The notes beneath the pieces were generated by a model. That model saw only the letters and a list, made by a program, of their open reading frames with translations, did not search any database and was not told the origin of the DNA. Shown in pieces: positions 54-35,444 of a stretch of DNA of 36,169 nt. The stretch is from Hyphochytrium catenoides (taxonomy: Eukaryota > Protista > Hyphochytriomycota), in assembly GCA_900088475.1 (NCBI GenBank), contig FLMG01003956.1, forward strand, positions 1 to 36,169, written 5' to 3'. The position numbers and the translations under genes are program-made. The stretch's first letter is position 1. Every line of letters begins with the position of its first letter.

Positions 54-597
54 TTATGGAGATGAGAGCTCTTCATATAACGCGTCCTTGCTAGGACACT
101 GACAGACTTCCTTATGCACATCCAAGTCCATGACGTCTTTATTGATTAGCATATGCTTTGACTTGGCGGCCGCCGCGCCTCGAAAGAGGCGGTTAGGCGA
201 TACACTGAAGGTTGCAGAACTCTTGGATGAGGGCTTCTTTCGCTCTCTTTCCTAAAAAACAACGCCATGGCCCTGTAGTGGATTCGCAAGGGCCATGAGG
301 CTGCCTCTCCACCCTCTCTCCGCGCCTTCCTTATCTTCTAGATCTCTCCATCTGCGTCCTCTGACTAATAAATATGAAGGTGTGGCCTGGATCTCGTTAG
401 ACCAACTGCAAGAGCTTCGGATCGTCCTCATGGACCGCATAGACTCCGTCCGTTGAGTAATCATCCAACCTATCAAACTCAATAGTAGACGCATCTGCGG
501 AGAAAAGCACACAGGGCGTCAGATCAAGTGGTTCAGAGGGAGAGAGAGACGAAACAGAGAAGAGGAAGAGAGAGAGAGAGACAGAGAGAGAGCGAAG

Positions 598-628
<31 letters not shown>

Positions 629-3600
629 TATATGTTACGGTCTCATTCAAGGTACCTGTCGGCGTCATTGAGGAGAGCTGCCCTCCATCTGGTCCCAAAC
701 ACTGCTTGAAGGACTTGGCAGCCACCATTACCTTTCCTTGCACCTTCCCTTTCAGCTGACTGCCCTTCGTCAGTTTTGAAGAGAAATTTTGCGCCTTGCC
801 AGGCTCCCGAGACGCCTTTCTGAGGGCAATGACACCTTCACCAAGGCTCTTGTTCTCAGCGTCTAGGAACTAGAGCAATAGTAAGGCAGTGAGGCAGAGA
901 AAACAATAAGCCAGCTAACGGGAGGCGTTCTGACCTGAAGAAGGACATGCACGCCATGATGTATCTGCGTCTGTCCCTTAAAAGTGAGGCTCCCTGACGA
1001 GTCACCGAGGTGAGAGTGGAGGGTTAAAAAAAAGAAGAAAGCAGCTCAAGGTACGTCACAAAACAAGAGAGAGAGACAGAGACTCAGAGTGTGAGAGAGA
1101 GACAGAGCGAGAGAGAAGCGAAAAGGCAAAGAAATAAGAGCATAGAATAGTCCGAAGAGGAAAAGATACATGTCGCGCTCACCTGTACTTTGCACCTGAC
1201 TCCAGCTTGTCTGTGTGATATTAGGAAACAGCACAGAGTCCTGTCTAGCGCTCGGGATGGAGAGAATACCTGCCACTTCGTGGATCTTACGTTGTCCCAT
1301 GTAGGGATCTTCAGGAGGAAGGGGAAACAGCGTGACGACGGACGAGATCTTGGAGAGATCCTGGTCTACCAAGGTCGCCATTATGTTGCTCAGCTCCACC
1401 TACCGGACGGAGTCGAGAGGCAGAGATCATCAGTACCGGGCTGACATTGTATTTACTCTAGCCTTTTTTTTCTCCATGCTCCACATTCTAGGTTTACAAC
1501 TATAAAGTTCTTGTTATCTCTCTCTTTTTACTCCCTCTTTTTCTCTGTCTCCTTCTCTCTCCCTATGTATGTCCCTCAATGTGTGTGTGTCTCTCTCTCC
1601 TTCTTGTGCAGCACAGCCTGAAGTATGTGGCATGATCTCCTCACAATATTTGTTACGCTGCTAGTTGCCTCCAACAATGGTTCTATGTCTCAGTCTCCTC
1701 TGTCAAGTTTCAACCCCAACAGTGATAATCGCTTTCTCTTCTGCCCTTCGCTGCGGCGCACTGAGACTTTGCATCTCTTGGCATCTCTCATTCCTTTGAC
1801 TCACCTCAAAAATGAGTAGCGAGTTCGCGGTTGGGTCACCTCTCGGAGGCAGCGTTCGGAAAAGCGTATCCACTTGAACCTTGACCTCAGAGCAAACCGG
1901 CCGATGATCGCTCATGACCAGACTCTCACAAATAGTGTATGACTTGGCGGAGAGACGACCCTGGGAAGAGANNNNNNNNNNNNNNNNNNNNNNNNNNNNN
2001 NNNNNNNNNNNNNCTTTACCTTATAGTCAGGCAAGGAGTGGAAGAGTATCCTATCTGTGTACGAAGGAGTACGTGCGCCCTGATGTAGGTTAAGGTTAGT
2101 ACGGAGGACTCATGAGTCTACTGAGCCACATTGAAGGCCTTGAAAGACTATCAGAGTCTGTTCTTGGAGGAGGCAAGTAGCTATCTATCCATGGTTCTCT
2201 CTTTCTCTTGTACTCTCTCGCTCTCTCTCCTCCTGTCTTCAGATCTACCTTGTCATTGCTGCCTCTGATGGAGTAGAGCTCAGCTATCCGTTCTGAAGTG
2301 AAGAGCTCATCTGTTGCCGCAGCTCCCTTCTGCCGCCGGTAAGAAGGAGGGAAAGCGATGGGCGGCTCGAAAAAGTTGCAGAAGATCTGCAGAAGGAGAC
2401 AGACCATAAGACTTGGAAGGGCCATCATAGAGGGAGGGGAGGAGAAGAGCACTGATAAGAGAGAGCCCACAGAGTCAATTAGTGGAAGAAATGGCGTAGC
2501 AATGAGAAGACTGGTTGAGGTGCGCACCTTAGATCGTTGCATAACCTGATACAGCTCATCGAGCTCACGTAACTCCTTCCAGCACGTATCAGCGGCACTG
2601 AAGGAAAGGAATGGCGGCGATGTGTAAGACAAGTCATGAAGGCATAAAATCTAACTCAAAAAAGATTGTGTCTTCTTACCTTTGGAGCTTTAACGCCCGG
2701 GCTGAACCCGTCTGAGATTCTCCCGCCTTGAGCTTGCTGACTAGCGGAGCTCGAGCTCTTTGAGCCTCTTCTTTAGCTTTTATCGCCTCTCTCTCTTGCC
2801 GCAGTTTCGACTCTAGTCGCATCACAACCTGGAGAAAGAGTCAGGCTTAGGACAGCGATCATGCAGATACCGCGGTCTTTTGCCACGAGTGCTTCTCCCT
2901 TTTCTTTTTTCTCTCTCTTTCTGTACTCTCGCCTCTCACTCTCTTTTCTCTCCCTGGGCTGAGCTTTTCCTTCCTGTCTGCTCAGCATCTGCAGTGCCGG
3001 TTCTCGTACCGAGACTTTATCCAGGACATTCTCCGGCGTCTCTAACAAGCGGTAGTTAAGATCACCCAGAAAGATTGTATGCTGGTGCACCAAAGGAAAG
3101 TCAAAGCCGTAGTCCTGCTCCTCCAACACCATGTCCTTGATAATCTGCCGTAGAATAAGAGAGTCACGTTCTGTCAGCACTCGTCACATCTATTGCGTGC
3201 TCTGCGCTCGTTTCTTCATATTGTCTCTCACTGATCCTTCTCTCTAACCATGCCAGTACTGGACTCTCTCTCCTCCGTACTCATCCTGCATCATACAGCG
3301 ATGGACTTACGCTGTAGACGTCCTCATTGCGCTGCTCAGCCATATTCTTGCCCTTGTAACCCAAAACGGTTAGGACAGGATCAGACTTCAGTGTAGCGAA
3401 GGGGCCTCCACCCCCAAGGAAAACGAGTAAATAACGAGGGAGAAACGTGGCAATATGGAAGAGTGAAAGAGAAAGAGACAGACAAACAGAGAGAGATGGA
3501 GAGAGAGAGAGAGAAACAGAGTAAGTGTAGGAGTTTCACCTTTTGGTCGGAAGACAGATGAGCAGTAAGGAACGCGAAGGTGGAGTCGTAAAAGCGGAAT

Positions 3601-6600
3601 GCCATGCCCACTGCACCCTTGTTGGGAGCTCTTCTGAGAAGGAGGTTTATTCCGCGGTTAACGCGCGCCTCTTTCAGATCAAACTGCCCCGCAGAGAAGA
3701 CTCCAGTGTCAACATACTGCTTCTTTGCGTAGACCGTTAGCCCGATATAGCCCTGAGGATATAGATCGGACATTAAATCACTATGCAGAGATTGCTAATG
3801 CTTAAAGAGAGTCAGAGAGAGAGGAGAGTACCCCGCACAAAGGTAAAGAGGATGACAAGGTGGCAGCTTATGAATAGGTTGCCTGGTCTTTCAGACTCAC
3901 ATGAAACCCGAGCTGCGTCGCGTTGCTGCCGATTTGGTCGCTGAACTCTACGTAGCACTCCGGGCCTCCAAGATGCTGGTGCATGACAGCCCTAACATTT
4001 GCGTCATGGTGAGGAGGCGACAATGAGGCCCTGTACAATCGATTGGCCGTCCATTGCTCTCTCTTATTCATGCTTCTCCGGTTCCTATTCTGTTTCCTAT
4101 CTACAAGGATGGCGTACCTGAGCTCGTTGAAACACAAGCATTCTTGTACGCCAATGATATAGACATCGTGATCCAATGGCAGCCATTCGTCTACATTTGG
4201 CGGGACACCTGTCAGGAGAGGCCGAGGAAGCACCATGGTGAGACAATATATCGAAAGGATTACTTGGCATTTGTGGCAAAGTGCGAAGACAAGATAGGTC
4301 AGAGACCGCACGGTGGAGGTGGGAGACGAACGGAGAAGCCCAGGATAATTCCCCAACATCCAGCACCTGTCTCTCCCATGTTAAAGGACGTGACATAGAA
4401 ACTCTTCTCCTCTAGCTTTTTGTTCTCTTCCTCGAAGAACTCAGGCTGCACGTCGAACATCTGCAGAGTACGTGTGAGATCAACAAATTGGAGGAAACGT
4501 AGCATCAACATCGTCATCTTTACAAAATGCAAACAGCATCAAATCAAAGAGAACCCGCGAAATTAGCGAGAGCAATAGGAATGGAGCCCTAACCTCGCTT
4601 CGCGTGTGCTTTAATGTTGGGGTCTTGAGCCATCTGGACCGCCACCAGTACTGAATAATTTTATCCGCATTGGAGTAGACGATAGCATTCAAAAAGCCTG
4701 CGAATTGATCACAATGTGGGCACGAGGGGACAGTTATTAGTTATTTGGAGAATGGCAGGCAGGACGACTGAGTGTATTTAGCGATGAGCTATTCCATTGG
4801 GGCAAGGAGAGACACAGACAGACGACAGACAGAGACAAGAGAGAGAGAGAAAGGGAGAGAGAGAGACAGAGAGAGACAGAGAGAGAGAGAGAGGAAGAGA
4901 AGACTCTTCTTTGATATGGATGAGTTGCCTTTGAAATAGTATAGATCGTCACGCATTGGAAAGAGAAGAGTCAAGAAACGCTACCCTGCAAGGGCTGGGA
5001 TACAGCGTGTACGACAGAGGCTGGGAAGTACGGCCGTCCTCTTATGCTCCAGATTATTCGATCCAGAAGCGCAAAAACCCAGATGCCTAAGAATGCAAGA
5101 AGATACTGCTGCAACTTCCGCACTACCGCGCGCTCAGAGGCGAACAAAGTCAATGCTATGGCAAGACAGGGAGACGGTGAGTGAAAGAGGTAGCAGAGGC
5201 GTGAAGCGGCAAGGGAACAAGTCATTGAAGGTTAGGCTGGAGTCAGGACAAAAGGGACAGGTCCTCTCCTTACCAGATGCCTCAGTCCTCTCACACCGGT
5301 GCCGAATCTCCTTCTTGACCCTCTCGGAGACCACGAGTACAAAGAAGAAAGCGATAAAGACAACGGAGTAGAAGTGATGGAGCTGCCAGGAAGGCTCAGA
5401 TATCCAGCACCAGAGTACAGAGTCTCCGTAAACAGCGGCTGAGCAGGAGGCGAGACGTTAGGGTCGTGGTGACGGGAATTTTAAGTGACCAAGATGCAGA
5501 AGGCAAAGTGCTCTCATTATTCTGGACGTGAGTGAGGACAAAGGCTGAGAAACGACAGCGGAGTTTAAAGGACCAAAGAGAGGGAGAAAAGAAGAAGCAA
5601 ACAAAAGGGAGAACAGCACAGATGAGGGACATGAGAGGAAACAGATTGATCTCTTCTGATAAAAGAAAGCGAGGAACCAAACTCAGCGATAGGCTAGGGA
5701 ATTGCAGCAGTGCACCAGAAAGAAGCTCTGCGGAAGGTCCTACCGATCGCAGGTGTGATAGTCATGATGGTACATATAGAGAAGGTGATGCCAGCATAAT
5801 AAGGCAGATAACGGCGGGTGCTCTCCTCTGTCTCCCTCCAACAGACCCAGAGATACATGTTGGTTGCGATGCAGGCTGTCCAGACTAACGAGCCGAGCGC
5901 TAGCCACTGTGTGGCTGCCGCTTGTAAGGTGCACACCCATGAGAGAGGCGTGTCAATTGATTCCGGGCCCGCCCTGCCCACGAGGTAGACAATGCTCAGA
6001 GCCAAGTCCTGATAAGAGCAAGAACAGAAGGCAGCCAACCGATAAACATCCGGCGAAGGCGAGAAGAGGTGAGGGCAAGCGTGTGCAAGTGTTAGGACGT
6101 GACAGCAACAGACAAGGACCGGGACGAATGAGTGAGTGAGGTCAAAGAGCTAATACAGCGGTGAAGCTTTTATGAAGGTCCGTTCAGAGGTAGGATTTAA
6201 GCCACAAGGAAAGAAGGAGACATAGCAGAGTAGGTGTCGAGGGGAGAGAGGAAGGGAGACAGAGAGAGAGAGATGAGGAGAGAGAAAGAAACAGAGAAAA
6301 GAGACAGAGAAGTGAATGAGAGAGAAACAGAAAGACGAGCGGGAAAGAAAAAGTGAGAAGTTGTTGAAAGGAATCAGTAAGCGAGAGTGAGAAGAGAGTA
6401 GTGATGACGAAACAAGAGAGAGACAGGACAACTCCTTCTTACAATGCTACATAGAACATAGACCAATAGATTGCTGAAGATGATACGTCGCTTCTGATAG
6501 CAGTTCCGGGCAAAGGAGTAGAGCACAACGGAGGCACCTGCATGAGGCCCCATAGGTCAGCGCATTAGACCCTGCAGGGGAAGGAAGAGCTCTGAAGGTG

Positions 6601-6699
6601 TTGGACGGCCTTACCCAGCATAGACAGCACGGACGAGACCGTGATGCCTACCACCAGCGCATAATTCTGACTCTCAGAGAGATCCTCGATGGCCATCAT
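54..6699 (-). CDS. GPCR-inositol polyphosphate 5-phosphatase fusion (cAR/GCR1/Git3-like 7TM + INPP5 catalytic domain + C2-like domain), multi-exon
   Basis: Spliced by hand with GT-AG junctions, in frame from ATG 6699. The 7TM part reads MMAIEDLSESQNYALVVGITVSSVLSMLG-ASVVLYSF...CSI-DLALSIVYLVG...CTLQAAATQW...WTACIATNMYLWV...YGDSVLWCWI...RKLQQYLLAFLGIWVF...PLQGFLNAIVY. It is followed by the 5-phosphatase motifs TSFNMGE, IGVQE, NKGAV, TAHL, GDLNYR, FPPSY, PSYTDRIL and SDHRPV, and then a C2-like segment. The 3' end is uncertain: stop at 397-399 if unspliced, or at 54-56 if the in-phase 66-codon exon 251-54 (preceded by TTTTTAG) is used. Confidence 0.9.
1972..2013. other. Assembly gap (N run) inside an intron
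   Basis: The Ns lie between the exon ending ...LPDYK and the exon starting GRLSAK; both splice sites are intact. Confidence 0.95.
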
Positions 6700-7059
6700 T
6701 CACGCCCAAGAGTCCCCAAGGTCCTGATGAAGCCTAATCCAGGGCCTCTAGCCTACTGCACAGCAGAGCATAGCACAATCTCTTTGCGCGTGGATGATGA
6801 ATCATAGCGCCAACGCTGTCAAAGCTAGAGAGACCACCTCATCAATAGGAGCTATTAAGGCAGCGAAGCGGCATAGGGACAGAGACGGACAAGCATATGC
6901 TATGCACTGTGTGTCTTTATCAACTTCTGGCCGTTCTCTTTCAGTCTCTTTTCTAAATCGAGATGCGACGGATTGTGGCCCTGCTCTTATCTCCGCTCTA
7001 AGTCCTTCGGAGCTCCGCCATGACGTTTGGCCCTGGCGCCAGGCCTGAGAGCCCTGTCT

Positions 7060-7353
7060 TTCCTCCTCTTTCTCCGTCTCTCTCTCTCCCTCTCTCTCTC
7101 TCTCTTTCTCCGTCTTCTCTCTCTTTGCCTTTCTTCTGCCCTCGGTGGGCCTGCTGCTGCCTCCGCCTATCTGACGGGGCCAAGAAAGAGAGCTGAAGTT
7201 TAGATAAGCGTTCATCGGAGAGACAAATAGGAGTTTGCAGAGGGCGGAGGAAGTTGACGGGAACAGTAGACATAGCAGAAGAGAGAGCGAGACAGAGAAA
7301 GAGAGAGAGACAGAGAGTGACACAGAGAGGGAGAGAGAGAGACAGAGAGAGAA

Positions 7354-7418
<65 letters not shown>

Positions 7419-7425
7419 GAGAAAG
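7060..7425. repeat. (CT)n tract followed by a long (GA)n microsatellite
   Basis: Directly visible: CT-rich 7060-7140, GA-rich 7275-7425. Confidence 0.9.
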
Positions 7426-8327
7426 TGTGATGAGTGGGAGGTCTACTTGATAGAAGCTGGAGAGGGAAGGAGGAAGGGTTATTCTTAGCCATGACACCTG
7501 GATCAGCCATTGAAACCCAGATATGGCGTGGGTATTATAATAAATGACAGAAGAGGCAATTAGTAGTTAACTAGGTTCAGAAAAATGAGGTAGTGTCGGT
7601 TACGGAGAGACGGTGTGGACAGGTGGAGGACAGCCTTTCAGTGAGAGAGGAGCCCAACAAGCTCAAGAACCTCTTCTATCACTGTTGCCACCAGCTCTTG
7701 GACATAGACACAAAGAGCGAAGGTGCAAGAGATAGAAGAAGATGCCAGGAACTATCTCGGGGAGCTGAAGAGCGCAGTGAGTCAAGTCTTGTTGCAGTAT
7801 TGTGGGAGAAGGGAAGGAGTTTCCAAAAGGTGAAGGAATAAGGTCTCTGGCCGCGTAAGCTCTCGGGGAATGGTTGACAGTTTGTGAATGAGGCAGAAGG
7901 TTCTTGCAAGAGCTACCCTTTTTAACGGTTCTCTGTACTGCAGCCTTTTCCTTCTAGCAAGTAGCTTAGCTTCGACCACGGGTTTCCACGTCCATTTCAG
8001 GACGATAGGCCCAACCACTTATACTCTCGAGAGTCTCTTCTCTTATGGCCTTTGTTCTTTCCACAAGGTGTTTCTCTCTATGATCTATCCGGTACGCTAC
8101 TTTGTGGTAGCTATCGGCATGAGGCTGAGGTAGAGGGCGCTGCAAACACTTGCAAATATTATCGAGGGTGGAAAGAAAGTCTGATTTACCAGAGGAGCGT
8201 TGAAAAAGATAAACCTTTCAGGGTATAACAGTACTTGCAGGCATGTCCGTCCTTAGGTTTAGGTCCAGGAGCCAGTTATAATGGACGCAGGCTCTTGGCA
8301 CATATACATATATATATACTTGCTCCG

Positions 8328-13287: not shown

Positions 13288-16200
13288 CTAGGCGGTGCTG
13301 TCTTCCTCGATGCCTGTGGCCACAATAGATACACGGAACTTGCCGTTCATCCCAAGCTCGTAGGAGGAGCCAAATATAATGTTAGCCATAGGATCCTCGA
13401 CCTCCTACACCAAGACAAGGCAGTAATTAAAAGAGGGTCGCAACTCGGACTGCCAGCGCTAGTAGTGAGTGGCGGGGAAAAGAAAGGGGAGCGAGAAAGA
13501 GAACGAGGGTATCAAACAGACATAGATAAAGATAGGAGAGGGGACAATCCTCAGCTGAAGAAGAGTCAGCCAAGGCTTCTGAGATGAGCGAGGCAGAGTC
13601 CCCACCATCTCGTCAAAGGAACAGAAGGCAGAGGCCACAGAAAGAAGTCAGAGTTGATGCGAGATAATCGACGTAGAGTAGTCTAGAGTTACCCTGGTAA
13701 TGCGGTCTGCCGCGCGGTCCACCTCAAAAAGAGTCATGTCGGGACCACCAGTGATGTTAACAATCATGCCCTTTGCGCCCTGCAGCGTTTGAGTGAGAGA
13801 GAGAGAGAGACAGAGTGAGGGCGGACCATCAGGGGGAGGAGAGCGACAGGACGGAATGAGTGAGTAGGAGAAAGAGGTTCAACGAGCACAGTCCCATCAC
13901 GTTGAAGATGAGGGTCTGCTCACCTTTATTGAAATATCCCCAAGAAGTGGATTGCTCAGGGCCAGTTCGGCTGCGGCAATCGCTCTGTTTGCAAGAGAAA
14001 GCGTAAGATGGATTCTCCAAAGATCTCACACTCTCCCGTCTGACGCCCTCCGTTCTTCCCCACTGTCCTTCACTCTCTCTCGCTCACGCTCTCCATATCC
14101 TTTACTTTCTCTTCACCTTCCTTTTCTGTCTTCTCTCTCTTTGTACTATTCGCTCCAACTCTCTCTTGCGCTTCCGTTCTCTCTCTCTCTCTGTGCTCTC
14201 CTTTTTCTCTCTGTGCTGCGGTCACCATCTCACCACCTTCTCACTCCTCCGCAAAGGAGCATGTTGGAAAGGGTCTCTTCACTCTCTTCCACCGCACCGC
14301 GATCGACTTACCTATTATCTCCCTCTGCTTCTCCACTACCCATCATTGCATTGCCACCGTTCACCATCACCTTATCGCAGGACATTGACCGAGAGATTGA
14401 AAGCGAGGCAACAGACAACAAATGTAAGCTGTATGGGCAACTGCTTATCTGTGACAGAGATATTTTCTGTTTGTGCTTGGTCTCTTACCGACTGGACGTC
14501 CGCAAAGTCAAGATTGATGAGCCCGGGCTTCACCATAAGATCCGTCACGTTCTTCACTCCGGCCAGGAGAACATCATCCGCCATCCTTCGGGGCGTTCGC
14601 AGGTAATAACAGACAAGAGAGTTCATCAGCTCTGACGGCTGCTTGTCAACGCGCAACAAGGAAGGTCTCAAAAGAGAGAGAGGGAGAAGAGACAGGGTCT
14701 ATGTTGACATCAAGTAATGGACAGTCACCTAAAAGCATCCATATAGGCTGTGTCTTTGGTTGCGGAGAGGAAGAGGTTTTGGTTGGGGATGATAATCATT
14801 GTGTCTACTGACTCCCTCAGACACCGGATCCCTTCATTCGCAAGGTTCATACGGTGGGGACCCTCGAATCTGAAAGGCTGAACAAAGCAAATTTGAAAGA
14901 CAGCGAAGGTAGAGCAGGCGGTGCGTAGAGGAAACGACAGGTCATGGTGAGCGGTTGAAGAGAGAAGAAAGAGGAAAGAGCTACAAAGCAGAAAGGAGGG
15001 TGAGCGCTAGAAGTAGGTAACTAACTGATAGGGGTGAACTAAGCGTTTTGGGACATGAAGAGGTCCGGCAGAGATGAAGTTGGCGATGAAGTTGGAAAGA
15101 GGAGCAGAGTCGTTGGCGCCTTCTTGGACGGCAGCGACAAAAGAATGCGGCACCTTGGTCACGACACCGACGGTGAGCATATCTGAGTCCATACAAGCTC
15201 GAGCGATGACTGGGGCTGCCCCTGTACCAGTCCCGCCGCCCATGCCCGCGGTGATGAAGACCTGGCACCAAAGGAAAGCGAGAGAAAGAAAGAGAGAGTA
15301 GAGTGTCCACATTTAAAAAGAGTGAGAGACAAAACGAGGGAATGCAAGTATATAGGTAGCGCGACAAAGAGTGACAGAAGACCTGGGATTGGAAGATAGA
15401 AAAGAAAGAGAAGAGAAAGAAAGAACGATAGAGAGAGAGAGAAAGAAAACCGACATATAGAGGGAGGGAGAGATATGCATAGAGAGCAGGACAGGGGAGG
15501 AGGAAGGGAGTCAAAAGAGATACAAACGGCATTAAAAGGGTAAAGTGTGAGAGAGAGAAAAGAGCAAAGCAGGTCATACAAGGAAAGGAAAGAAGGCTCA
15601 AACCTTACCATGTCGACGTCACCGATGGTGTCCAAGATTTCTTCCTGAGACTCCAAAGCCGCTTCTCGCCTGTTATTCACTCACGTCAATCTCTGCGCAA
15701 GGGCACAGCAGGACGGGTATGGCTCCTAATCACTTGGAGAAGTATAGTATACCACCATTGTCTTCCGTCTGATGCTCTCTCTCCTCTTGCCAACCTACAA
15801 CTCACCCTATCTGGGGCTTGGCACCTGCCCCTAAGCCACCAGTCTGTCCCCTTCCCATCTGTACTCTATTGTCAGCGAGCGTGGCATTGAGGTGCTGCGA
15901 GTCAGTATTGCACACGACGAACTTGACGCCTTCCAGACCTCGGGCTATCATATTGTTCACTGGTAACACGTGCGAAATCGTCACCAGGCTATTAAAGCAG
16001 GTAAGAATGATAGCTGAGTGCCTAAGTAGGACAACACCACGGACGTGCTGATCCTGAACGGACATGAAGGAGAAGGGAGTGAGAAAGAGAGGCCCGGTAC
16101 CTGCATTACCCCCTGCTCCTCCTACTCCGACAACCACAATCTTCGGTGCAAAGATTTCAATGTGATAGTGTTCTTGATGTCGGGGCAGCGGGTACGATGA

Positions 16201-16570
16201 ATTTGGCATCTTGAACTCTTCAGGCTGTGGAGTGGCCGCTGCGCTGCTGGCGGCCGCGGGCTCTGAGGGAGAAATAGGAGAACTTGGTGGAGCCTTCTCT
16301 AAGGATGGTACATCCACTATTGTCTGAAGTCTCTCTTTTTCCTTCTGCTTCATGCCCTACTTTCATCCCAATATCAGAGGAGGGATACCATCGCACCTGT
16401 TAAGAAAGGTAACTGACCTTTTGGAGAACTGAAGCAGCGGTTTTGGTTGCCGAGGCTGCGGCTTCTGCCTTCTGTCGAGTCTGTTGGAAGCCCGCCCTCC
16501 CCAGAGAGCCCCGAGAGGGCAAAGCCCGCAGGGGTTGCAGCAACGTGCTGACCTTAGTACGAGCCCACAT
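13288..16570 (-). CDS. ftsZ: Mitochondrial FtsZ (alphaproteobacterial type) with N-terminal presequence, lacking the C-terminal tail; 11 exons
   Basis: Spliced motifs: [132 protein letters not shown]. Exon 1 (16570-16418), [34 protein letters not shown]..., is Arg-rich and acid-poor. Confidence 0.95.
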
Positions 16571-20658: not shown

Positions 20659-23335
20659 TTAAGGCTCTGAGGCTTCGTTGCAAGCTGGGGGTACATCGAA
20701 GGCATTTTCAAAGCCGTCAGGTTTGGCAGACACACCCAGTCCACGCTTAGCAAAGCCCTTCCAGATGTCGCAGTGGTTGGCTCCGTTATTGTTTGCTTCA
20801 TCAGCCTGCAAAATGGCATCTCGCGCCTGTACGAGAGTTGGATTGCAGGGCTGGAGCTTCATCCCATCCATAACGAGCTGCATCATCAAAGTGTTGCCTT
20901 TCCCACTCTTTGCGTCGTCCTTATACTGAGGGGTGAAGCCCAGCTTGTCGATGAGGTTCCAGTACACCTCCAACAGCATCGCACACCAGACTTCTCCAAT
21001 CTTATGCACCTTGTTATACTCCTTCAGATAGGAGTACGTGTGCGGGTTCACTTGCATGTCCGTCGTGTAGGGAAAGCGCCGAATGCCGAGAGGGTTCTCC
21101 GTCACATATACACCCACAGCGAAGGAGCTCTGTCGTGTGTCTGTCTCCTTCGTCCTTAGCGCTGTGGCGTAAAAGTCTGACCATCCTTCACCCATTCCTC
21201 GGGACTGAAGGTTGCTTAGACAGTTAGGAGTGTCCGCTCCACCGGTGAGTCTGTTGGAGAGTCCGTGCGTGACCTCATGCACGATAATATCGTTCGACAG
21301 AGCGCCGTCTCGCATAGGTTTGGTACTATCCCTGTTGATGATTTTCAGTGATTAGTTGGGGCAAATCGGGCAAAAGCTAGAAGCGAGAAGAATTGTGGAA
21401 GAGCAAAGAGTAGCAGTGTGGTGCAGGATCTAATGACGGAATCCCAAAGACCCAGGAGCCACTTCAATAGAAGCGTCAGTAGAGTCCTTTTAGGCGGTAC
21501 CGTTGCAAGAAACGCCAGACATTCTCAAGCAACGTGGTAGGACTGCAGACTCAGACAGAACGAGAGACGAAAGGGCGGGAAGAGGGTCAAGTTAAAAAGG
21601 ACATCAGTACATACCAGAGGAACATTGTCATTCGCGGAGACCGTCCGTCGACCGGTGTTCCAAAGACTGCGTTATTGAGAGCCGACTCATCCTGGCAAAC
21701 TGCCAGCACTGGGTCATTCGCCTTGCCTCCACCACTGTTGGCATTCTGGAAGTTCCCAGCCTCTTCGGTGAAGCCGTAAGCGTAATAGATGTCATGCACA
21801 GCGTTGGTCATGTAGAACATGTTTGTCACTGCCACCTCCCTATTCGCCTGGGGCGCGGCGCTCTCATTGAAGGTGAAGTTGAAGTTATAGCCTTCAGCTC
21901 GCACTGCTTCATTCTTCAGCCAGTCCACGGCGTAGACATTGTTTCCTGTCGTCAGGCCTGCAGGTCCGGAGCCGTTATTATGCCAACCCTGTGGTGAGTA
22001 TCGCAGGTCCTGAGGGTCCGTTAAGATGTTAAATGGGCCATCCGAAGGGTCCGCGAAGCCTAAAGGGATAACGTTATAGCTAACATCAGATACGCCAGGC
22101 GCCAATCTCCGCCTAAGATAGCTGTTCCCGCTGTTATAGGTCGTCTCTAGATCGTCATCAGGCGTCTCTACTAGGAGCTTTAACTGCTCAGTCCTCAACA
22201 GAGAGCGATAATGTCTGTCTCCACTGGGTAACTCCAGTTCAAACGTGTCCATTTGCAATTGTCCCGAGAGGGAGGAGCGTGGTACGTTGGACTCAGAGTT
22301 CCAGTCGGAAACAGCTATGATACGTCCTTCCTTATTGGCGCTGACGAAAACGTTGAGCCTTCAATGGAGGCGTAAAGGGAGGAAGGGTGTGGGACAGAAT
22401 CATGAGTATCAAACACCGACAATAATGGCTGCTTAGCCTCAGGTGCTGTTTAGAAACATGCAGGGCAAACGAGGAGCAGGATGTGGCCAGCAGAGAAATG
22501 GTAGCGGGAATGAAGAGGACCGCAGGGGCTAGCATAACAACGAGAAGGATTAGATCACAGAGGCAAAGCAGCTTTTCTTTCGCTGGGAGGCTTACCAGTT
22601 CTTTGGCATCTCAACTTCCAGACTCCAGACGAGCTCAAGGGCATTGTCAGTGGCTTGGTAGAACTTCAGCTCCGCCTGCACCTCACGTCCTAGGGCGAAG
22701 GAAGCGCCCTTGATGGTCCAATCAATCGGAACTCCTCTTACTTCCTTGGATCCTTTGACTCCCTCCAGCAGCAACTGCGACGTATCTATGCCAGCAGATC
22801 TCGCGAAGCTTTTCACGGCATCGACCGCAGAGATCTCTGGAACGATGTTCCCTGAACCCGTGCCGTCGCCGCTGACTGGCGTGTCGGCGTCTGCCACAGT
22901 GCTGGCATAGGTTAGGATGTTATTGTTCTTGTCAACAGTTACCTTGAGCCCCCCATTTTCCACCTGCAGGCCCTCCTTAGTCTGTGCCATGTAGATGTGA
23001 TAAAGCCCGTTGTGTGCGTCTCTGAACTCTCGAATGGTCTCTACCGTGGGCGTTTCTGCGCCTCGGGCAGTGCCTTGAGCGAGCTTCTGCTGGATGAACT
23101 TCAGAGCAGACTCTGACTGGCTGGAGCCTCGGCCAGGCAGATGAAGGCCCGTTGTGAACTCTCCTTTCGGTTGCCAATAGGAGGGAGCAGTGAGAGACAC
23201 CTTAACAGTCTCCTCAGCCGTAGCTGAACGGCCTGCAAGCCCTCCTGCTGTCACCAGCAAAGCGGCTAGCATGCTTACTCTCATTCCCTGCCTGTTGCAT
23301 GCCATTCGGCCGCGAGGAGATGTTTTGCGGGCCAT
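20659..23335 (-). CDS. Secreted fungalysin (peptidase M36) zinc metalloprotease preproenzyme, 3 exons
   Basis: Exons 23335-22596, 22358-21615 and 21331-20659. Signal peptide (MLAALLVTAGGLAG); FTP-type propeptide (GLYHIYMAQTKEGLQVENG); SPQGWH, TTGNNV, TNMFYMTNAVHDIYYAYGFTEEAGNFQ; HEVTHGLSNRLTGG; third Zn ligand in GMGEGWSD; VHKIGEVW; DGMKLQPCNPT; WKGFAKRGLG. Confidence 0.95.
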
Positions 23336-26726: not shown

Positions 26727-29700
26727 ATGAGCACAGCAACTGCAACAGGAGGGGACATCCTCGATGCCGACTTCCAGGCGGCACATAAGCTGCTGGAGGA
26801 GGAGGCGACCATTCGCAGCGCCTTCATCCAGAAGGTATCATACGATGTGGCTTTGGAGCTGAGGAAGGATGGAACTTACAGCGGGAGGAACATCATCAAG
26901 TTCACCTTCGTTGGCAGCAAACAACCAGCCGACTTTACTCCCTTCTTGGACTTCACGGGAAAAGCTATCCACAAGTTCGTGGTCAACGGCCAAGAGGCAG
27001 CTCGCACGTTGGAAGTTGCCCTACAGGGCCAGAAGAAGGAGGTGGGCGTCTGGAGTAACAATCGCCTTTACTTGGATCCCCAGCTTCTGAAGGAAGGCGA
27101 GAATCTGGTGCAAGTCGAGTATACCAATAACTATGACAAGACTGGGGCAGGTCCGACAACAAGCTGCTTCGTTTTACCTTCGTCCCCGATGTCTCCTAAG
27201 TGGATCCAAGTGCTCCCCTCATCTTACGTTTCTTGTCTTTCGTAAGCCCCGTATGCTTTCCTTCTTCAACCTGCGCTTCTCAGTCCTTCTTCTCTATTTG
27301 GAGCCATTGCCTTGCTCTTTCCTTACTTGGATGGTTTAGCTCACCAACGTACCGTGTCCTGTCACTCCCGGTTCATCTATCCGAAGACGTGGCCTTCCAT
27401 CCCGTACTTCCACTCGCTCATTCTTCTCTCAATCATTTGACGCCCCAATCTTCCCTTCATATTCTCCAATCGTGATAAACGGCAGGCTTGCACTGCTTTG
27501 AGGACCCAGAGGACGGAGAGATCTACGTCTATTCCAACTTTGAGCCGTATGACTGTCACATGATGATCCCTTGTTTCGATCAGCCGGACATCAAGGCGCC
27601 CTGGACCCTAAAGGTCATTGCCCCTAACACCTGGAAGGTAAGATAGACGAAGATGCAGAGGAGGTGAGGAGAGGAGGACGTGGAATGGAGAGGATAGAGA
27701 CGCTCGTTGTTTGTCTTCTTATCAGCAGCGAGAGCAAGACTGACAAATTTGCACTGATTACTTCTCTGCAATCCCTCTTCTCTATGCCTATCGGACTCTC
27801 CCGATCAAAGGTTGTCGCCAACGCCCCTGCCGTATCCTCTGCTGTCCCAGTGAATGGCTCCAAGGATTTTGGAGAGTGGACTTTTGAGGCGACGCCTGCC
27901 ATCTCCACCTACCTCTACGCGCTGGTGGGCGGACCTTACGAGGAGTTTAAAGATGTCCATAAGAACGGTAACATCCCTCTGGGAATGTACTGCAGGTACG
28001 GTCTTCTAACCCGACAGTCTAGGAGGAAAAGAGGGAGACAGAGCTACTAGCGAACAGTACGAGCGTTGACCAAAGAACGAGAGACAGAGGCAGAGAAGCT
28101 CTAGCACATAACGTTAAAGGCAAAAGTGAGATATGGAGAACAACCTTCTGGGACCTTCGGTATCTATTGACCATGGTACTCTCTCCTTCGTTGTCTTGTT
28201 CTCTCCTACCTGCAGAAAGACTCTGGTTAAGTTTCTGACCGCTGAGGAGCGCGAGGAGCTGTTTACCGTCACGAAACAAGGTCTTGACTTCTTCGGAGAG
28301 TTCTTTGGCATCGCATATCCCTTCAAGAAGTACGACCAAATCTTCTGCCCCGAGTTTAACGCGGGAGCTATGGAGAACCCGGGCTGTGTGACGTTCACTG
28401 AGTACTATATCTTCAGAGACCCACCCACTCTTGTCCAAAGGTACGTGATAAGGCGCGAACAGCAGCAACCGCTAAGTGGAGAACCATGTGTGACGACAGA
28501 GAATGGCTTTCAAGTTAGGGCGGCTAGGGAGAGGTGGGCAACGATCGAGGATCCGCGGCGAGTAGGAAGCTAAGAGACTTAGAAGATATGGGCGATAGAG
28601 AGTTATGGACCCTTGGGCTGTCCTTATGCCCGCTAGCAACTTTCTTGTTCTCACGTCGCTTTCCTATTACTCTCTCCGATAACTTGTCAACGTAACCGCG
28701 ACTGGCAGGGTTGGGCGTGCTGACACCTTCCTGCATGAGATGGTGAGGCTTTTAACGCGTCTTTCACATTTTCTGTTTCTTGCGAGCGCCTCATCTTCTC
28801 CCCTTTACCTTCCATCCACCTCTAATGCACCCACTTCAAACACTAGGCACACATGTGGTTTGGCAATCTGGTCACTATGAAGTGGTAAGTACTCTGGTCT
28901 TGGATGAGGGCTAATTCTGTAGACTTAGCCATGGGACTGACTGTCCTCTTCTTCTGCCTCTTCCGACACTTCTCTTTACCTGAATGTCTCACCCTATAGG
29001 TGGAACGGCCTCTGGTTGAACGAGTCCTTCGCAACCTACATGGCAGCGCTTGCCGTAGCTGAGTGTACCAAATTTGGTCAAACTTCCTGGGTGATGTTTG
29101 GCTCTTCTCTACGACGCTGGGCAATGGACCAGGACGAGTTGGAGACAACTCATCCCATCGAAGGAGCTGTAAGAGACACCTCAGAGACGTTCCTCAACTT
29201 TGACGGTATCACCTATGGAAAAGGCGCTTGTACGCTGAAGCAGCTTGTCTTCCTCGTCGGCATGGACAACTTCAAGGCAGGAATGCAGGTACATGGTGAC
29301 TTTCTTGTGGGGTTGACGTGTTGCTGTTGCTCTTTCTGTTACCTACCTTTGTGTCCAAGACGTCCTAGTGGGCCAGCGTGCTCCTCTGCTGTTGGGAAAG
29401 TGTCGTCGCCCTGGTTTGACATTTGGTCGCCTCCTCTCCCTTCTTATGTTTTCTCGAGCAGTCCTCCGTTGCAAAATCTTGCTTATCTCTGATTGCTCTC
29501 CCTCTCGTTCTCCCATTTAGTACTATTTCTCTAAGTACAAGTGGGGCAACACGACGGTCGAAGACTTCCTCCATGCCATCCAAGAGAAATGTGCTGGCGT
29601 CGACCTTGATGCTTGGGAGAGGCAATGGCTTCGCACTTCGGGACCCAGCACACTGACTCCTCAATGGTCCGTAGACTCTGAGGGCAAGATCCAGAATTTT

Positions 29701-31819
29701 GATATCATCCAGACGGCGCCTGAGGAGCATCCGCACCTCCGGCAGCACAAGGTGGAGGTCGCAATGTTTGACGAGGCAGGGAGGATGCTGCATAGGACCA
29801 AAGCGGAGATCAATGGGGAGAAGTCCTGCGTGAAGGAGGTGAGAGTTATAAGCAGTCCTTCGTTGGTGCTCCAGCCTCCTGTTCTCTTTAGATTATTCCC
29901 CTCAGCTTTCGAAGAATTGTCAAGCTCTTAAGGTCGTGAGCTCTCCTCCTAATCCGGCTCTCTCTTCCCGCTCACAGCTGGTTGGCAAGGCAGCTTCCAA
30001 TGTAGCCTTTACCTATATCAACTTTGGAGACCACGGTTATGGCAAGTTCAACCTAGGCGAGCGCTCAATCAGCTTTCTCAGCCAGGCTCTGCAGCCAGAC
30101 TTCTTCAAGGTATGGCCTTGCATATGTTTTCGGTCTGCTCTGTTGTCTCTCACTTCCTGCCATGCAGGATGATCTATTGACGAAGCAGGCTGTGTGGGAC
30201 TCGGCCTGGTACATGGTTCGAGACCGCAAGCTGAGCGTTCTTCGCTACCTTTCCTTCGTCAGAGAGGCTCTGGTCAAGGACGATGGTGATGATTGGCTAT
30301 CTTCCTTCCCTTCTTTCTTCTCTGGATCTCATCGTTTGTTCCCTTTTCTATTCACTTTGGCTTCGCTACTTCTCTCTATCTGTGGTGCTCTTAATGATTT
30401 CTCTTTTTGCACGTGGATGGGCTGGTGTGCACTCTTGGTCTTCTACCTCCTTTTTAGCTTATTTGGTGAGCTCGTTAGTAGCATCCATTAACGATGAGTC
30501 CCTCTCATAGACTCGCGTCTGGTGGACCTTGTACGCGGTACCTTGATGCGCGCCCTCTACTCCTACACGCCTTCGGAGTATCTGGAGAGAGAGTGCTCTT
30601 CTCTTTTCTCTGCCGCTCTAGGTCGGCTCAGTACTCTTCCGATGGAGTTGGAGGGCCTCAAGAGCTCTTGGGGCAAGGTCCTTGTGCTCGCAACGGAGAC
30701 AAAAGATGACCTTGAGAGAATGCTCGGCGTGATTGATAACAACGAAGTAATCAATGGCTATTCTCTAGATCAAAGTTTAAGGTAAGGTACCGTCCAGATC
30801 CAGTAACACATTCGAACCTGCTGATTGCAGTGAATTGGGCAGATACGAGTTCTTCTCCGTTTGTCACTAGCCATTCTCTCACTGTGGCTCAGAACGGATG
30901 GCCGATGGGTTGCTGATGCCTTTCCGTTGTCCTGTCGTCCCTGCTGTTCTCTCTTTGCTGCTTCAGGCTTGCCTCCTTTCCCACCTAGTCCTCTCATTCA
31001 TTCCCAAACATCAATTTGCTACTAGGCAACTGGCTGCACGTGTGTGACTCCCTCTCTCTATCCATTCGCCTACCGTCACTTTCATCAGGTGGACCATCAT
31101 TGAGCTTGGGTTTGCGCATGGACTGCCTGGTATGGAAGAGCGCCTGGAGCGCGAGCTTGCTCGGGACCCAAGTGATGTGGGGAAACAGAGTGCCAAGACC
31201 TGCAGAGCCGCGCAGCCTACGGCAGAGGCGAAAGCGGCAGCCTGGGCCCGGTACGTTGCTGAGAAGCCTGAGGACACGAACCACATGATGTTTGCAGGTG
31301 AGACGCAAGGAAGCGAGTCACTGGCGCTTGTGTTATGTATCAATCTTCTCCTCACCTAACCCTACTACATATTTTCTTTCCTGCAACAATGGTCTCAGCT
31401 ACCCTACTCTCTCTTTTTCTCTCTCTCTTCCTCTAACTGGGCGTCTTGTTCCCTCTGTTTCTCTCTCTCTCTTCTACGAAGACATGAGTGGCTTTCAACA
31501 GCGGAACCAGGCAGCCCTCCTAGAGCCTTATGTGGAAAAGTACTTCAACACCATTCGTGATATCTGCAACACGAGGAACAAGGAATACGCCATGTCTTTC
31601 CTTTCTCTCCTGCACCCTCTCCTGCATGACAAGTCGGAGGGGGGAAGTCTCACGACTGGAGAGGATCTTGTGCGCCGTTGGGAGCAGCTGTTAGCTCAGG
31701 TTGAGCAGGGACAAAGCGGAGAAGCAGGGGACACGATCCTGAAGAGACCTGGCAAGGATCGCATCAGCAATCTGAAGAGAGCGATGGGCATCAGAGCTTT
31801 TGCCAGAGAAAATCCTTAA
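26727..31819 (+). CDS. pepN: M1-family aminopeptidase N (bacterial PepN-like) with C-terminal helical domain, multi-exon
   Basis: [97 protein letters not shown] (HEXXH-X18-E), THPI, NFDGITYGKGA, LRQHK, NFGDHGYGK. No signal peptide. Confidence 0.93.
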
Positions 31820-35200: not shown

Positions 35201-35444
35201 TCAAGCTTCGCAAGCCGCCGCAGTAGGGCAGTCTGGTCAGCAGAGAGCCCCGCGAACATCTCACTAACATCAGAACACAACAGCGTCAGACAAGCCGAGG
35301 AGTAAGGCGAGACCCAACCATAAGACGGATCGGACCGTCAGATGGAAAGAGGCGCGTGAGCATCGATGGAAGAGAAGCTTGTACAAGGTAAGAGGGGGAG
35401 AGAGANNNNNNNNNNNNNNNNNNNNNNNNNNNNNNNNNNNNNNN

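What the first reader, a model, noticed from the sequence alone, without database searches (positions are those of the whole stretch)
54..6699. One-polypeptide signalling system: 7TM receptor fused to an intact inositol 5-phosphatase
Seen: about 20 small exons splice in frame, with no stop between TM7 (QGFLNAIVY) and the first phosphatase strand (FYVTSFNMGE). The linker is only ~40 aa (SNADKIIQYWWRSRWLKTPTLKHTRSE-MFDVQPEFFEEENKKLEEKS). All 5-phosphatase catalytic motifs are present (QE, AHL, GDLNYR, PSYTDR, SDH). Known: GPCR-INPP and GPCR-PIP-kinase fusions are reported mainly from oomycetes and are functionally poorly understood, so the architecture class is not wholly new. Inference: this could be a ligand-gated or membrane-anchored phosphoinositide phosphatase able to signal without a heterotrimeric G protein. 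The ORF track shows only fragments of it.
Basis: partly seen in the sequence, partly recalled or inferred. Interest (0 to 1): 0.85.

Follow-up and report, generated by a model that had tools for sequence, protein, structure and literature searches.

The report
Receptor fused to lipid 5-phosphatase gene
This is one real, expressed 21-exon gene that joins a cAMP-receptor-like seven-helix membrane receptor to an intact SHIP-like inositol-lipid 5-phosphatase plus C2 domain; this "GPCR-INPP" design is already described in oomycetes, so it is a new member of a known but functionally untested class.

Summary
On the minus strand, 21 GT-AG exons (6699..397) splice in frame into a 903-aa protein. It has a Dicty_CAR-like 7TM receptor (aa 1-270), helix 8 plus a flexible linker of about 45 aa, a 5-phosphatase domain (316-686) and a C2-like domain (700-852).

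- **Junction:** spliced RNA contigs from two runs remove introns 5-8.
- **Assembly gap:** the gap at 1972-2013 lies inside intron 16, between a donor and an acceptor. Homologues align across the exon 16|17 junction without an indel.
- **Family:** the spliced protein aligns end to end with more than 25 proteins of the same architecture. These include oomycete GPCR-INPPs (Aphanomyces) and transcript-derived proteins from Ancoracysta, Mataza and Paraphysomonas.
- **Conservation:** all 34 invariant family columns are kept, including every catalytic residue.
- **Phosphatase-C2 module:** at family level it is closest to human SHIP1/SHIP2 in both sequence and predicted fold.

Verdict: a new member of the published GPCR-INPP "bigram" class. 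Two modest additions are a wider taxonomic spread than published and a SHIP-type C2 domain as a constant third part. Ligand gating and G-protein independence remain untested inference.

The parts
397..6699 (-). Whole coding region of the GPCR-INPP gene. It has 21 exons: 6699-6615, 6537-6443, 6008-5744, 5438-5274, 5155-4985, 4697-4594, 4460-4367, 4208-4118, 3991-3901, 3752-3540, 3352-3311, 3144-3010, 2828-2680, 2597-2528, 2386-2249, 2079-2020, 1960-1805, 1399-1183, 993-935, 869-656, 494-397. The product is 903 aa.
   Evidence: Model built and translated. All introns are GT..AG. The family profile scores it at 810 bits, E 1e-247.
4669..6699 (-). 7TM receptor domain (aa 1-270, exons 1-6), cAR/Dicty_CAR-like. 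TM cores lie at about aa 13-35, 48-70, 86-108, 128-150, 168-190, 219-241 and 249-270. The Cys86-Cys159 pair (TM3 top to the ECL2 WCWI hairpin), R236 (TM6) and G261/N264/Y268 (TM7) are present.
   Evidence: Pfam Dicty_CAR matches exon 3 (20.1 bits, profile 73-132) and exon 5 (18.1 bits, profile 204-239). Helices were mapped from the AlphaFold model of P0007. K+R counts are 14 in inside loops against 3 in outside loops. The core residues are shared with unfused cAR-like receptors.
4401..4668 (-). Helix 8 and flexible linker (aa 271-315), interrupted by intron 6 (4593-4461). This is the junction between receptor and phosphatase.
   Evidence: An X1 RNA contig joins 4460|4594 with no mismatches. 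The equivalent stretch of P0007 has pLDDT below 50. No column is conserved here in alignment A1. The distance from the TM7 Asn to the strand-1 Asn is 58 aa, against a family range of 51-90.
1871..4400 (-). Inositol polyphosphate 5-phosphatase catalytic domain (aa 316-686, exons 7-17). Key residues are N322, E349, H452, D500/N502/R504, R639/P641/S642/T644/D645/R646 and S673/D674/H675. Exon 13 encodes a charged insert (about aa 525-565) at a site where the family is variable.
   Evidence: Pfam Exo_endo_phos2 matches exon 10 (22.9 bits) and exon 12 (18.8 bits). All invariant family columns are kept. The family profile matches SHIP2 5okm at E 3.9e-51. RNA joints are seen at 4208|4367 and 3991|4118.
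1972..2013 (.). Assembly gap (N run) lying inside intron 16, between the donor GTAAAG (2019-2014) and the acceptor ...CCCAG (1971-1961).
   Evidence: Sequence read. Homologues align across aa 656|657 without an indel. No read spans the gap.
714..1831 (-). C2-like beta-sandwich domain (aa 700-852, exons 17-20), SHIP-type, directly behind the phosphatase. It holds the conserved FPLPPEDP...RK and HVLLQ...LGEGVIALR motifs.
   Evidence: A family C2 profile matches the model at aa 720-852, E 9e-33, and matches every full-length family member including the oomycete ones. Foldseek places the P0007 model on SHIP1/SHIP2 Ptase-C2 two-domain structures over about 550 columns, TM 0.72-0.75. Exon 20 weakly matches Pfam C2_SHIP1-2_2nd (15.8 bits, E 0.016, below the cut-off).
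397..713 (-). Unconserved C-terminal tail (aa 853-903) and the TAA stop (399-397). This 3' end of the model is the least certain part.
   Evidence: There is no homology beyond aa 853 and no RNA coverage. An alternative extra exon at 251-55 is possible from the sequence alone.

Best explanation
**What it is.** A single expressed gene encodes a three-part membrane protein of the GPCR-INPP 'bigram' class:
- a cAR-like seven-helix receptor, N-terminus outside;
- helix 8 and an unconserved tether of about 45 aa;
- a cytosolic SHIP-like module made of a catalytically complete inositol-lipid 5-phosphatase packed against a C2 domain.

**Shown.**
- the reading frame and the architecture;
- removal of introns 5-8 in RNA, including the intron at the receptor/phosphatase junction;
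- retention of every residue that is invariant in the family;
- the same architecture in distant protists.

**Inferred.**
- The enzyme is held permanently at the membrane. There it removes the 5-phosphate from PI(3,4,5)P3 and/or PI(4,5)P2, and the C2 domain helps engage the bilayer as in SHIP2.
- Because the receptor core keeps all hallmarks of unfused cAR-like receptors, an extracellular ligand most likely controls where or how strongly the phosphatase acts. The route could be the conformation of TM6/TM7/helix 8, clustering or trafficking.
- This would give a receptor-local sink for a phosphoinositide signal, with or without G proteins.
For: **Gene and RNA**
- In-frame 21-exon model.
- Spliced RNA contigs across 4594|4460, 4367|4208 and 4118|3991, plus exon 5 running into exon 6, from two runs.

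**Domains and family**
- Co-linear Pfam hits on exon pieces for Dicty_CAR and Exo_endo_phos2.
- The nearest relatives of the receptor exon alone are themselves Dicty_CAR plus Exo_endo_phos2 fusions.
- Single blastp alignments span both domains with more than 25 fusion proteins, including Ancoracysta (E 1e-125) and Aphanomyces astaci (E 4e-97).
- P0004 is encoded as one uninterrupted ORF on a 3-kb transcript contig.
- All 34 invariant family columns are kept.

**Structure**
- The AlphaFold model of P0007 (pLDDT 80.6, pTM 0.78) has seven TM helices, helix 8, a disordered linker, the phosphatase and a beta-sandwich.
- Its best solved-structure matches are SHIP1/SHIP2 Ptase-C2.
- The C2 domain is present in all full-length members.

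**Topology and receptor core**
- The positive-inside rule puts the phosphatase in the cytosol.
- Receptor-core residues are shared with unfused cAR-like receptors.
Against: - There is no enzymatic, ligand or localisation data for any GPCR-INPP (PMC5784254, PMC6033456).
- RNA support is thin: depth is 2-3, the contigs are 151 nt, only exons 5-9 are covered, and no single molecule spans the whole gene.
- The structure was predicted for a 32%-identical homologue, not for the window's own protein.
- The linker is unconserved and predicted to be disordered, which argues against rigid allosteric coupling.
- Substrate preference is inferred only from the SHIP/INPP5E-like affinity of the catalytic domain.
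- On separate exon pieces, every Pfam hit is individually below the curated cut-off.
Confidence: 0.8

Rival explanations
1. Anchor only. The 7TM part has lost or never had ligand-dependent control. It serves only to fix and target a constitutively active 5-phosphatase to a particular membrane.
For: - The tether is unconserved in sequence and variable in length (51-90 aa).
- It is predicted to be disordered.
- No fusion-specific conserved intracellular motif was found. The conserved 7TM positions are the general cAR-like ones.
Against: - Over very deep divergence (about 30% identity) the receptor keeps the TM3-ECL2 cysteine pair, the WCWI hairpin, the TM6 N/D-R motif and the TM7 P..QG..N...Y motif, exactly as in unfused receptors. 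A simple anchor would not need these.
- pTM 0.78 for a three-domain model hints at a defined arrangement of the domains.
Confidence: 0.3
2. Conventional GPCR with a passenger. The receptor signals through heterotrimeric G proteins like cAR1. The attached phosphatase acts as a built-in terminator or feedback arm, not as the primary output.
For: - The 7TM core is indistinguishable in its conserved positions from unfused cAR-like GPCRs.
- The family profile matches G-protein-coupled class A and class B receptors in the PDB.
- Unchecked first-reader notes report 7TM-RGS genes elsewhere in this genome, which suggests active G-protein signalling.
Against: - Nothing in the sequence tests coupling.
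- ICL3 and the tail carry no recognisable coupling motif.
- The published view leaves this open (PMC5784254).
Confidence: 0.3
3. Two neighbouring genes (a receptor and a phosphatase) wrongly joined by the reader, or an assembly artefact at the gap.
For: - Only short RNA contigs are available.
- Exons 1-4 and 10-21 have no read support.
- An assembly gap lies inside the locus.
Against: - An RNA contig with no mismatches covers all of exon 6 (TM7 and tail) and joins it to exon 7 at the predicted GT..AG intron.
- There is no stop and no start signal between the two domains.
- More than 25 homologues have the same fusion, several from transcriptomes.
- The gap is intronic and homologues align across it.
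Confidence: 0.03
4. Decaying or catalytically dead copy, that is, a pseudo-phosphatase used only as a lipid-binding module.
For: - The window protein sits on a long branch (1.6 changes per site).
- It departs from the family consensus at a few 7TM positions: D235 for N, S256/Q257, and S269/N270.
Against: - The 2.7-kb frame is open across 21 exons.
- All catalytic and metal-binding residues, and all 34 invariant columns, are intact.
- The gene is transcribed and spliced.
Confidence: 0.03

Closest known systems
Oomycete and Nannochloropsis GPCR-INPP 'GPCR-bigrams' (van den Hoogen et al. 2018, mBio, PMC5784254; for example Aphanomyces astaci H257_05900 = P0040)
   Same: - The order of parts is the same: an N-terminal cAR-type 7TM domain, a short tether, an inositol polyphosphate 5-phosphatase and a C-terminal C2-like domain.
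- The proteins are homologous over both domains (31% identity over aa 19-678, E 4e-97).
- The C2 profile is shared.
- The invariant residues are the same.
   Different: - The window's protein sits on its own long branch and is no more than 34% identical to any member. It does not group with the oomycete sequences.
- Its gene has 20 introns.
- The published survey limits the class to oomycetes and Nannochloropsis. Here relatives also appear in Provora (Ancoracysta), Cercozoa (Mataza) and chrysophytes (Paraphysomonas).
- The window's organism is not identified.
Human SHIP1/SHIP2 phosphatase-C2 module (PDB 6xy7, 6ibd, 5okm)
   Same: - These are the best solved-structure matches for the family by sequence (E 3.9e-51, with a separate co-linear stretch on the C2 domain) and by fold (two-domain alignment of about 550 columns, TM 0.72-0.75).
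- The catalytic motifs are the same.
- The window's ...LGEGVIALR strand resembles the aligned SHIP1 stretch ...YGEGCIALR.
   Different: - There is no SH2 domain, no proline-rich or NPXY tail and no second SHIP C2 domain.
- Membrane attachment is through a covalent 7TM domain, not through recruitment to phosphotyrosine.
- The Pfam C2_SHIP1-2_2nd hit is below the cut-off (15.8 against 27.5 bits).
- Substrate specificity is untested.
GPCR-PIPK (Dictyostelium RpkA, Phytophthora GK proteins)
   Same: It also has a cAR-type 7TM domain fused to a phosphoinositide-metabolising enzyme in one polypeptide. Its coupling mechanism and ligands are likewise unknown (PMC5784254; PMC10445921).
   Different: - The catalytic direction is opposite: a kinase that makes PI(4,5)P2, against a 5-phosphatase that removes the 5-phosphate.
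- GPCR-PIPKs have a conserved LRxGI linker motif. The GPCR-INPP linker has no conserved column.
Dictyostelium cAR1 and cAR-like (Crl) receptors, Pfam Dicty_CAR
   Same: - The 7TM domain matches this Pfam family on co-linear exon pieces.
- The conserved core positions are shared with unfused relatives.
   Different: cAR1 has a long phosphorylated C-terminal tail and signals through G-alpha-2. Here the tail is replaced by an enzyme. The ligand is unknown.

Membership tests
GPCR-INPP bigram (van den Hoogen et al. 2018) | N-terminal GPCR-type domain with seven transmembrane helices | tested here: met
   - Seven helices were mapped from the AlphaFold model of homologue P0007 onto aa 9-268.
- Hydropathy of the seven cores is 0.65-2.1, with TM7 the weakest.
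- K+R counts are 14 inside against 3 outside.
- No dedicated TM predictor was available.
GPCR-INPP bigram (van den Hoogen et al. 2018) | Inositol polyphosphate phosphatase domain C-terminal to the 7TM domain in the same polypeptide | tested here: met
   - The exon 6 to exon 7 splice is in frame.
- It is confirmed by an RNA contig joining 4594|4460.
- No single read spans the entire gene.
GPCR-INPP bigram (van den Hoogen et al. 2018) | Homology to the oomycete members over both domains | tested here: met
   - blastp to Aphanomyces astaci P0040 covers aa 19-678, E 4e-97, and to A. invadans P0048 covers aa 6-687, E 3e-63.
- The model falls inside the fusion clade relative to INPP5E and synaptojanin outgroups.
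Inositol polyphosphate 5-phosphatase (Pfam Exo_endo_phos2 / IPPc) | Pfam profile match above the curated cut-off | tested here: inconclusive
   - Only exon pieces could be scanned: exon 10 gives 22.9 bits and exon 12 gives 18.8 bits against a cut-off of 27. The hits are co-linear (profile 98-140 and 165-190), and their rough sum is 41.7 bits.
- Homologues that align full-length score 128-152 bits.
Inositol polyphosphate 5-phosphatase (Pfam Exo_endo_phos2 / IPPc) | Catalytic and metal-binding residues: strand-1 Asn, QE Glu, xHL His, GDxN(Y/F)R, P(S/A)(W/Y)xDR, SDH | tested here: met
   - N322, E349, H452, D500/N502/R504, P641/S642/D645/R646 and S673/D674/H675 are all present, and all sit at invariant family columns.
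- They are aligned to SHIP1/SHIP2.
Inositol polyphosphate 5-phosphatase (Pfam Exo_endo_phos2 / IPPc) | 5-phosphatase activity and substrate preference | not testable with these tools
   This needs an enzyme assay. The closest solved relatives are the PI(3,4,5)P3 5-phosphatases SHIP1/2, followed by INPP5E.
SHIP-type Ptase-C2 module | C2 beta-sandwich directly after, and packed against, the 5-phosphatase domain | tested here: met
   - At family level, Foldseek aligns the P0007 model to SHIP1/2 Ptase-C2 two-domain structures, TM 0.72-0.75.
- The window's aa 720-852 match the family C2 profile at E 9e-33.
- The window's own protein was not folded.
SHIP-type Ptase-C2 module | Pfam C2_SHIP1-2_2nd match above the cut-off | tested here: not met
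   - Exon 20 scores 15.8 bits, E 0.016, against a cut-off of 27.5. P0004 scores 16.4 and P0034 scores 13.4.
- The family profile matches the SHIP2 C2 domain at 16.9 bits, i-E 0.013.
- This is a fold-level relative, not a Pfam-level member.
SHIP1/SHIP2 orthologues | N-terminal SH2 domain and a C-terminal proline-rich or NPXY region | tested here: not met
   The N-terminus is a 7TM domain, and no SH2 hit appears in any family member. The protein works like the SHIP catalytic core but is not a SHIP.
cAR-like GPCR (Pfam Dicty_CAR, class E) | Pfam profile match above the curated cut-off | tested here: inconclusive
   - Exon 3 scores 20.1 bits and exon 5 scores 18.1 bits against a cut-off of 21. The hits are co-linear, and their rough sum is 38 bits.
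- 22 of 24 aligned homologues pass.
cAR-like GPCR (Pfam Dicty_CAR, class E) | Ligand binding and G-protein coupling | not testable with these tools
   Only the conservation of core residues shared with unfused relatives could be shown.

The most novel reading that the evidence does not exclude
The protein is a true one-component chemosensor. Ligand binding to the cAR-like 7TM domain would directly switch a tethered SHIP-like PI(3,4,5)P3/PI(4,5)P2 5-phosphatase, without a heterotrimeric G protein. The design would be ancient, because full-length relatives occur in Stramenopiles, Rhizaria, Provora and this unidentified intron-rich protist, not just in oomycetes. Unchecked first-reader notes report other receptor-enzyme fusions (7TM-kinase, 7TM-PI3K-like) in the same genome. 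If those hold, receptor-local writing and erasing of phosphoinositide marks could be a general signalling logic in such protists.
Probability: 0.25. Interest if true: 0.8.

Novelty: new member of a known kind. Interest (0 to 1): 0.45.

Why it matters
GPCR-INPPs have been known on paper since 2018, but no member has a ligand, an activity or a phenotype.

This locus gives a well-supported full-length example from outside the published host range. The receptor/enzyme junction is confirmed in RNA. The analysis also adds two points about the family as a whole:
- The enzyme part is a SHIP-like phosphatase-C2 module, which suggests PI(3,4,5)P3 or PI(4,5)P2 as the substrate and a C2-assisted membrane mechanism.
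- The fusion is spread across at least three eukaryotic supergroup-level lineages, so it is old and maintained by selection.

If ligand gating were shown, it would be a direct receptor-to-lipid-phosphatase switch. That is relevant to chemotaxis and phagocytosis models built on PIP3 gradients. As it stands, the gene itself is an expected member of a described class.

Tried and rejected
1. **Searching with the spliced 903-aa protein directly.** I used exon pieces, local blastp/hmmsearch in scripts, and the homologue P0007 as a proxy for structure prediction.
2. **Looking for an orthologue.** phmmer of exon 3 against 1.8 billion representatives found no close orthologue (best 38-40% identity, no E below 1e-10). 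The window's own protein therefore seems absent from the collections.
3. **A second search for RNA runs.** Using exon 3 alone as the query listed none, so exons 1-4 and 10-21 stay without read support.
4. **Exon pieces against PDB sequences.** Exon 20 gave only chance-level hits, and exon 10 gave weak INPP5E/SHIP2 hits (E 0.02-0.05).
5. **Identifying the organism.**
   - Names are coded or hidden in the tool outputs.
   - The length filter of the homologue search makes exon pieces of the neighbouring genes uninformative.
   - Notes of the scan say only 'protist'.
   - The pyrimidine-rich repeat introns and gap-ridden assembly resemble the published description of Physarum (PMC4758236). That is only a resemblance.
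   - The amoebozoan GPCR survey does not mention a phosphatase fusion.
6. **Skipping exon 13 (the charged insert).** This would break the frame. Both ends of the exon align to homologues, so I kept it.
7. **An earlier donor for exon 20 (GK|GTAATG).** I rejected it because the family C2 profile aligns through ...KVMVAAKS beyond that site.
8. **The ORFs at 6802-7510.** These are translations of GA/CT microsatellite and were not taken as an upstream exon. Homologues start at the same N-terminus as the model.


Full report
**1. Is it there?**

Reading the minus strand and its three frames, I assembled a model of 21 exons from the ATG at 6699 to a TAA at 399-397.
- Every intron is GT..AG. The CDS is 2712 nt, giving a 903-aa protein.
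- Introns range from 59 to 434 nt (median 160). They are pyrimidine-rich on the coding strand (60% C+T, against 50% in exons), with CT microsatellites.
These are the TM7 motif, the linker split by intron 6 (4593-4461), the first phosphatase strand and the five catalytic motifs.
Nothing supports or excludes it, and it does not affect the finding.

**2. The assembly gap**

The N run at 1972-2013 is bounded directly by GTAAAG (2019-2014) and by TCTCTTCCCAG (1971-1961). It therefore lies inside intron 16, and its estimated length cannot change the frame.
- Exons 16 and 17 meet in phase 0.
- Five homologues align across aa 656|657 with no indel.
- The distance from the PSxTDR Asp to the SDH Asp is 29 aa in both the model and the Ancoracysta homologue.
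- No read crosses the gap, so DNA continuity is inferred, not shown.

**3. One transcript or two?**

Two RNA runs hold spliced fragments.
- A 151-nt contig of X1 with no mismatches covers 4415-4460 and 4594-4698. That is all of exon 6 (TM7 and tail) joined to exon 7 at the predicted intron.
- A second X1 contig joins exons 7, 8 and 9.
- X2 is a soil metatranscriptome. It has the exon 8-9 joint, and also an exon 5 contig whose 13-nt overhang is the start of exon 6.
- Depth is low (2-3). Exons 1-4 and 10-21 have no reads, and a search with exon 3 alone listed no run.

**4. What the parts are**

*Pfam on exon pieces*
- Dicty_CAR matches exon 3 (profile 73-132) and exon 5 (profile 204-239).
- Exo_endo_phos2 matches exon 10 (profile 98-140) and exon 12 (profile 165-190).
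- Each hit is below its cut-off alone, but the hits are co-linear.

*Relatives*
- phmmer of exon 3 against 1.8 billion representatives found only distant relatives (at most 40% identity).
- The long relatives among them (P0002, P0004, P0007, P0009, P0021/P0024) are themselves Dicty_CAR plus Exo_endo_phos2 fusions.
- A search with P0007 returned about 25 such fusions. They include Aphanomyces astaci H257_05900 and an A. invadans protein.
- Locally, the spliced model aligns in single HSPs across both domains: P0007 at E 1e-125, P0004 at E 1e-121 and the oomycete P0040 at E 4e-97.
- A profile of 24 family members scores the model at 810 bits.
- All 34 invariant columns of that alignment are retained. 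They are N322, E325, Y343, Q348, E349, C350, G378, G385, H387, G388, I390, H452, G459, R466, G499, D500, N502, R504, W573, E597, R608, R639, P641, S642, T644, D645, R646, Y664, S673, D674 and H675, plus R236, G261 and N264 in TM6/TM7.

**5. Fold and topology**

The spliced protein cannot be handed to the structure tool, so I folded the closest complete homologue, P0007 from the Ancoracysta transcriptome, using the family alignment.
- Quality: pLDDT 80.6, pTM 0.78.
- Elements: seven long helices, an ECL2 hairpin, helix 8, a disordered stretch at 275-311, the phosphatase at 314-657 and a beta-sandwich at 671-826.
- Mapped to the window protein, these give TM1-7 within aa 9-268, helix 8 at 272-280, the linker to 315, the phosphatase at 316-686 and the C2 domain at 700-852.
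- Inside loops carry 14 K+R against 3 outside. The N-terminus is therefore outside and the enzyme is cytosolic.
- TM7 is only weakly hydrophobic (0.65), as is usual for GPCRs.

**6. SHIP-like module**

- P0007 residues 300-887, and also the family profile, hit SHIP1/SHIP2 Ptase-C2 constructs best (E 1e-28 and 4e-51). A separate co-linear stretch falls on the SHIP C2 domain.
- Foldseek's top 25 matches are SHIP1/SHIP2 Ptase-C2 structures aligned over about 550 columns (TM 0.72-0.75). They rank ahead of the phosphatase-only structures.
- The C2 profile is found in every full-length member, oomycete ones included. It matches the window protein at aa 720-852 (E 9e-33).
- Exon 20 alone gives a sub-threshold hit to Pfam C2_SHIP1-2_2nd.
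- There is no SH2 domain anywhere in the family. The protein works like a SHIP core but is not a SHIP.
- The 2018 papers do not mention a C2 domain or SHIP.

**7. Receptor or anchor?**

- Positions conserved in at least 13 of 16 fused receptors are mostly the same residues in unfused cAR-like receptors. They include the C86/C159 pair, Q89, W103, WCWI, Y221, F225, N/D235-R236, P258, G261, N264 and Y268. The 7TM part therefore looks like a working receptor core.
- The tether has no conserved column. It varies from 51 to 90 aa (58 in the window protein) and is predicted to be disordered. A rigid allosteric rod is unlikely. Control by proximity, docking or trafficking is more plausible.
- None of this can be decided from sequence.

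**8. Comparison with the literature**

- GPCR-INPPs were defined by van den Hoogen et al. (PMC5784254; review PMC6033456).
- They reported seven genes in Phytophthora infestans, one to nine in other oomycetes, and otherwise only Nannochloropsis. There are no functional data.
- Later papers that cite the term add nothing on INPP fusions.
- In AlphaFold DB clusters the only full-length matches are three entries, one of which is the Albugo protein F0WRX1.
- Here the family also appears in Provora (Ancoracysta), Cercozoa (Mataza, with an EF-hand pair inserted in the phosphatase) and a chrysophyte (Paraphysomonas).
- In a quick ML tree the window protein sits on a long branch inside the fusion family, with no close relative and only weak (80) placement.

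**9. Verdict**

The gene is a new member of a known architecture class. The interest is moderate and rests on three points:
- an RNA-supported example from an apparently unsampled lineage;
- a broader phyletic spread than published;
- recognition of the SHIP-type C2 domain as a constant third part.

The mechanism (ligand-controlled, possibly G-protein-independent lipid 5-phosphatase) is still inference.

Noticed in passing
window 55-251 (minus strand): A possible extra terminal exon. A strong acceptor (GTTGTTTTTTAG|G at 252/251) opens a 65-codon frame ending at 57-55. It could be reached from a weak GTCTAA donor just before the TAA at 399-397. This would replace the last residue and lengthen the tail. 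There is no homology or read support.
   Followed up: partly
P0009 / P0022 (Mataza sp., Cercozoa), residues about 380-445 of P0009: This GPCR-INPP relative carries an EF-hand pair inserted inside the phosphatase domain, between the QE strand and the next conserved strand (Pfam EF-hand_7, E 1.6e-13). It would be a Ca2+-sensing variant of the same fusion.
   Followed up: partly
window 1-36169, introns of the gene at 397-6699: Introns are pyrimidine-rich on the coding strand (60% C+T) with CT microsatellites. GC and AT skew flip along the window. Assembly gaps sit next to such repeats (1972-2013 and 35406-35444). This resembles the published description of the Physarum genome (PMC4758236), but the organism was not identified.
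   Followed up: partly
window 3939-5121, run X2: A soil metatranscriptome holds spliced fragments of this gene with 1-2 differences: F225F (synonymous) and D339N. The organism or a close strain is therefore transcriptionally active in soil.
   Followed up: partly
window 6802-7510 (minus strand): ORFs of 231 and 170 aa just upstream of the gene are translations of GA/CT microsatellite (runs of LSLSLS and ERERER). They are almost certainly not coding.
   Followed up: no
window 15802-16353, 20659-23335, 26727-31819, 32296-32892: Neighbouring genes seen in the ORF list are an FtsZ-like gene (GGAGGNA motif), a three-exon M36 fungalysin-like metalloprotease (HEVTH), an M1 aminopeptidase-like gene, and a Gly/Arg-rich protein with repeated DLLxAIRG (WH2-like) motifs.
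   Followed up: no
model aa 898-903 and P0002 C-terminus: The window protein ends in ...KLLQLV and the relative P0002 ends in ...LLQPSSLV. This may be a shared hydrophobic C-terminal (PDZ-ligand-like) ending, or it may be coincidence.
   Followed up: no
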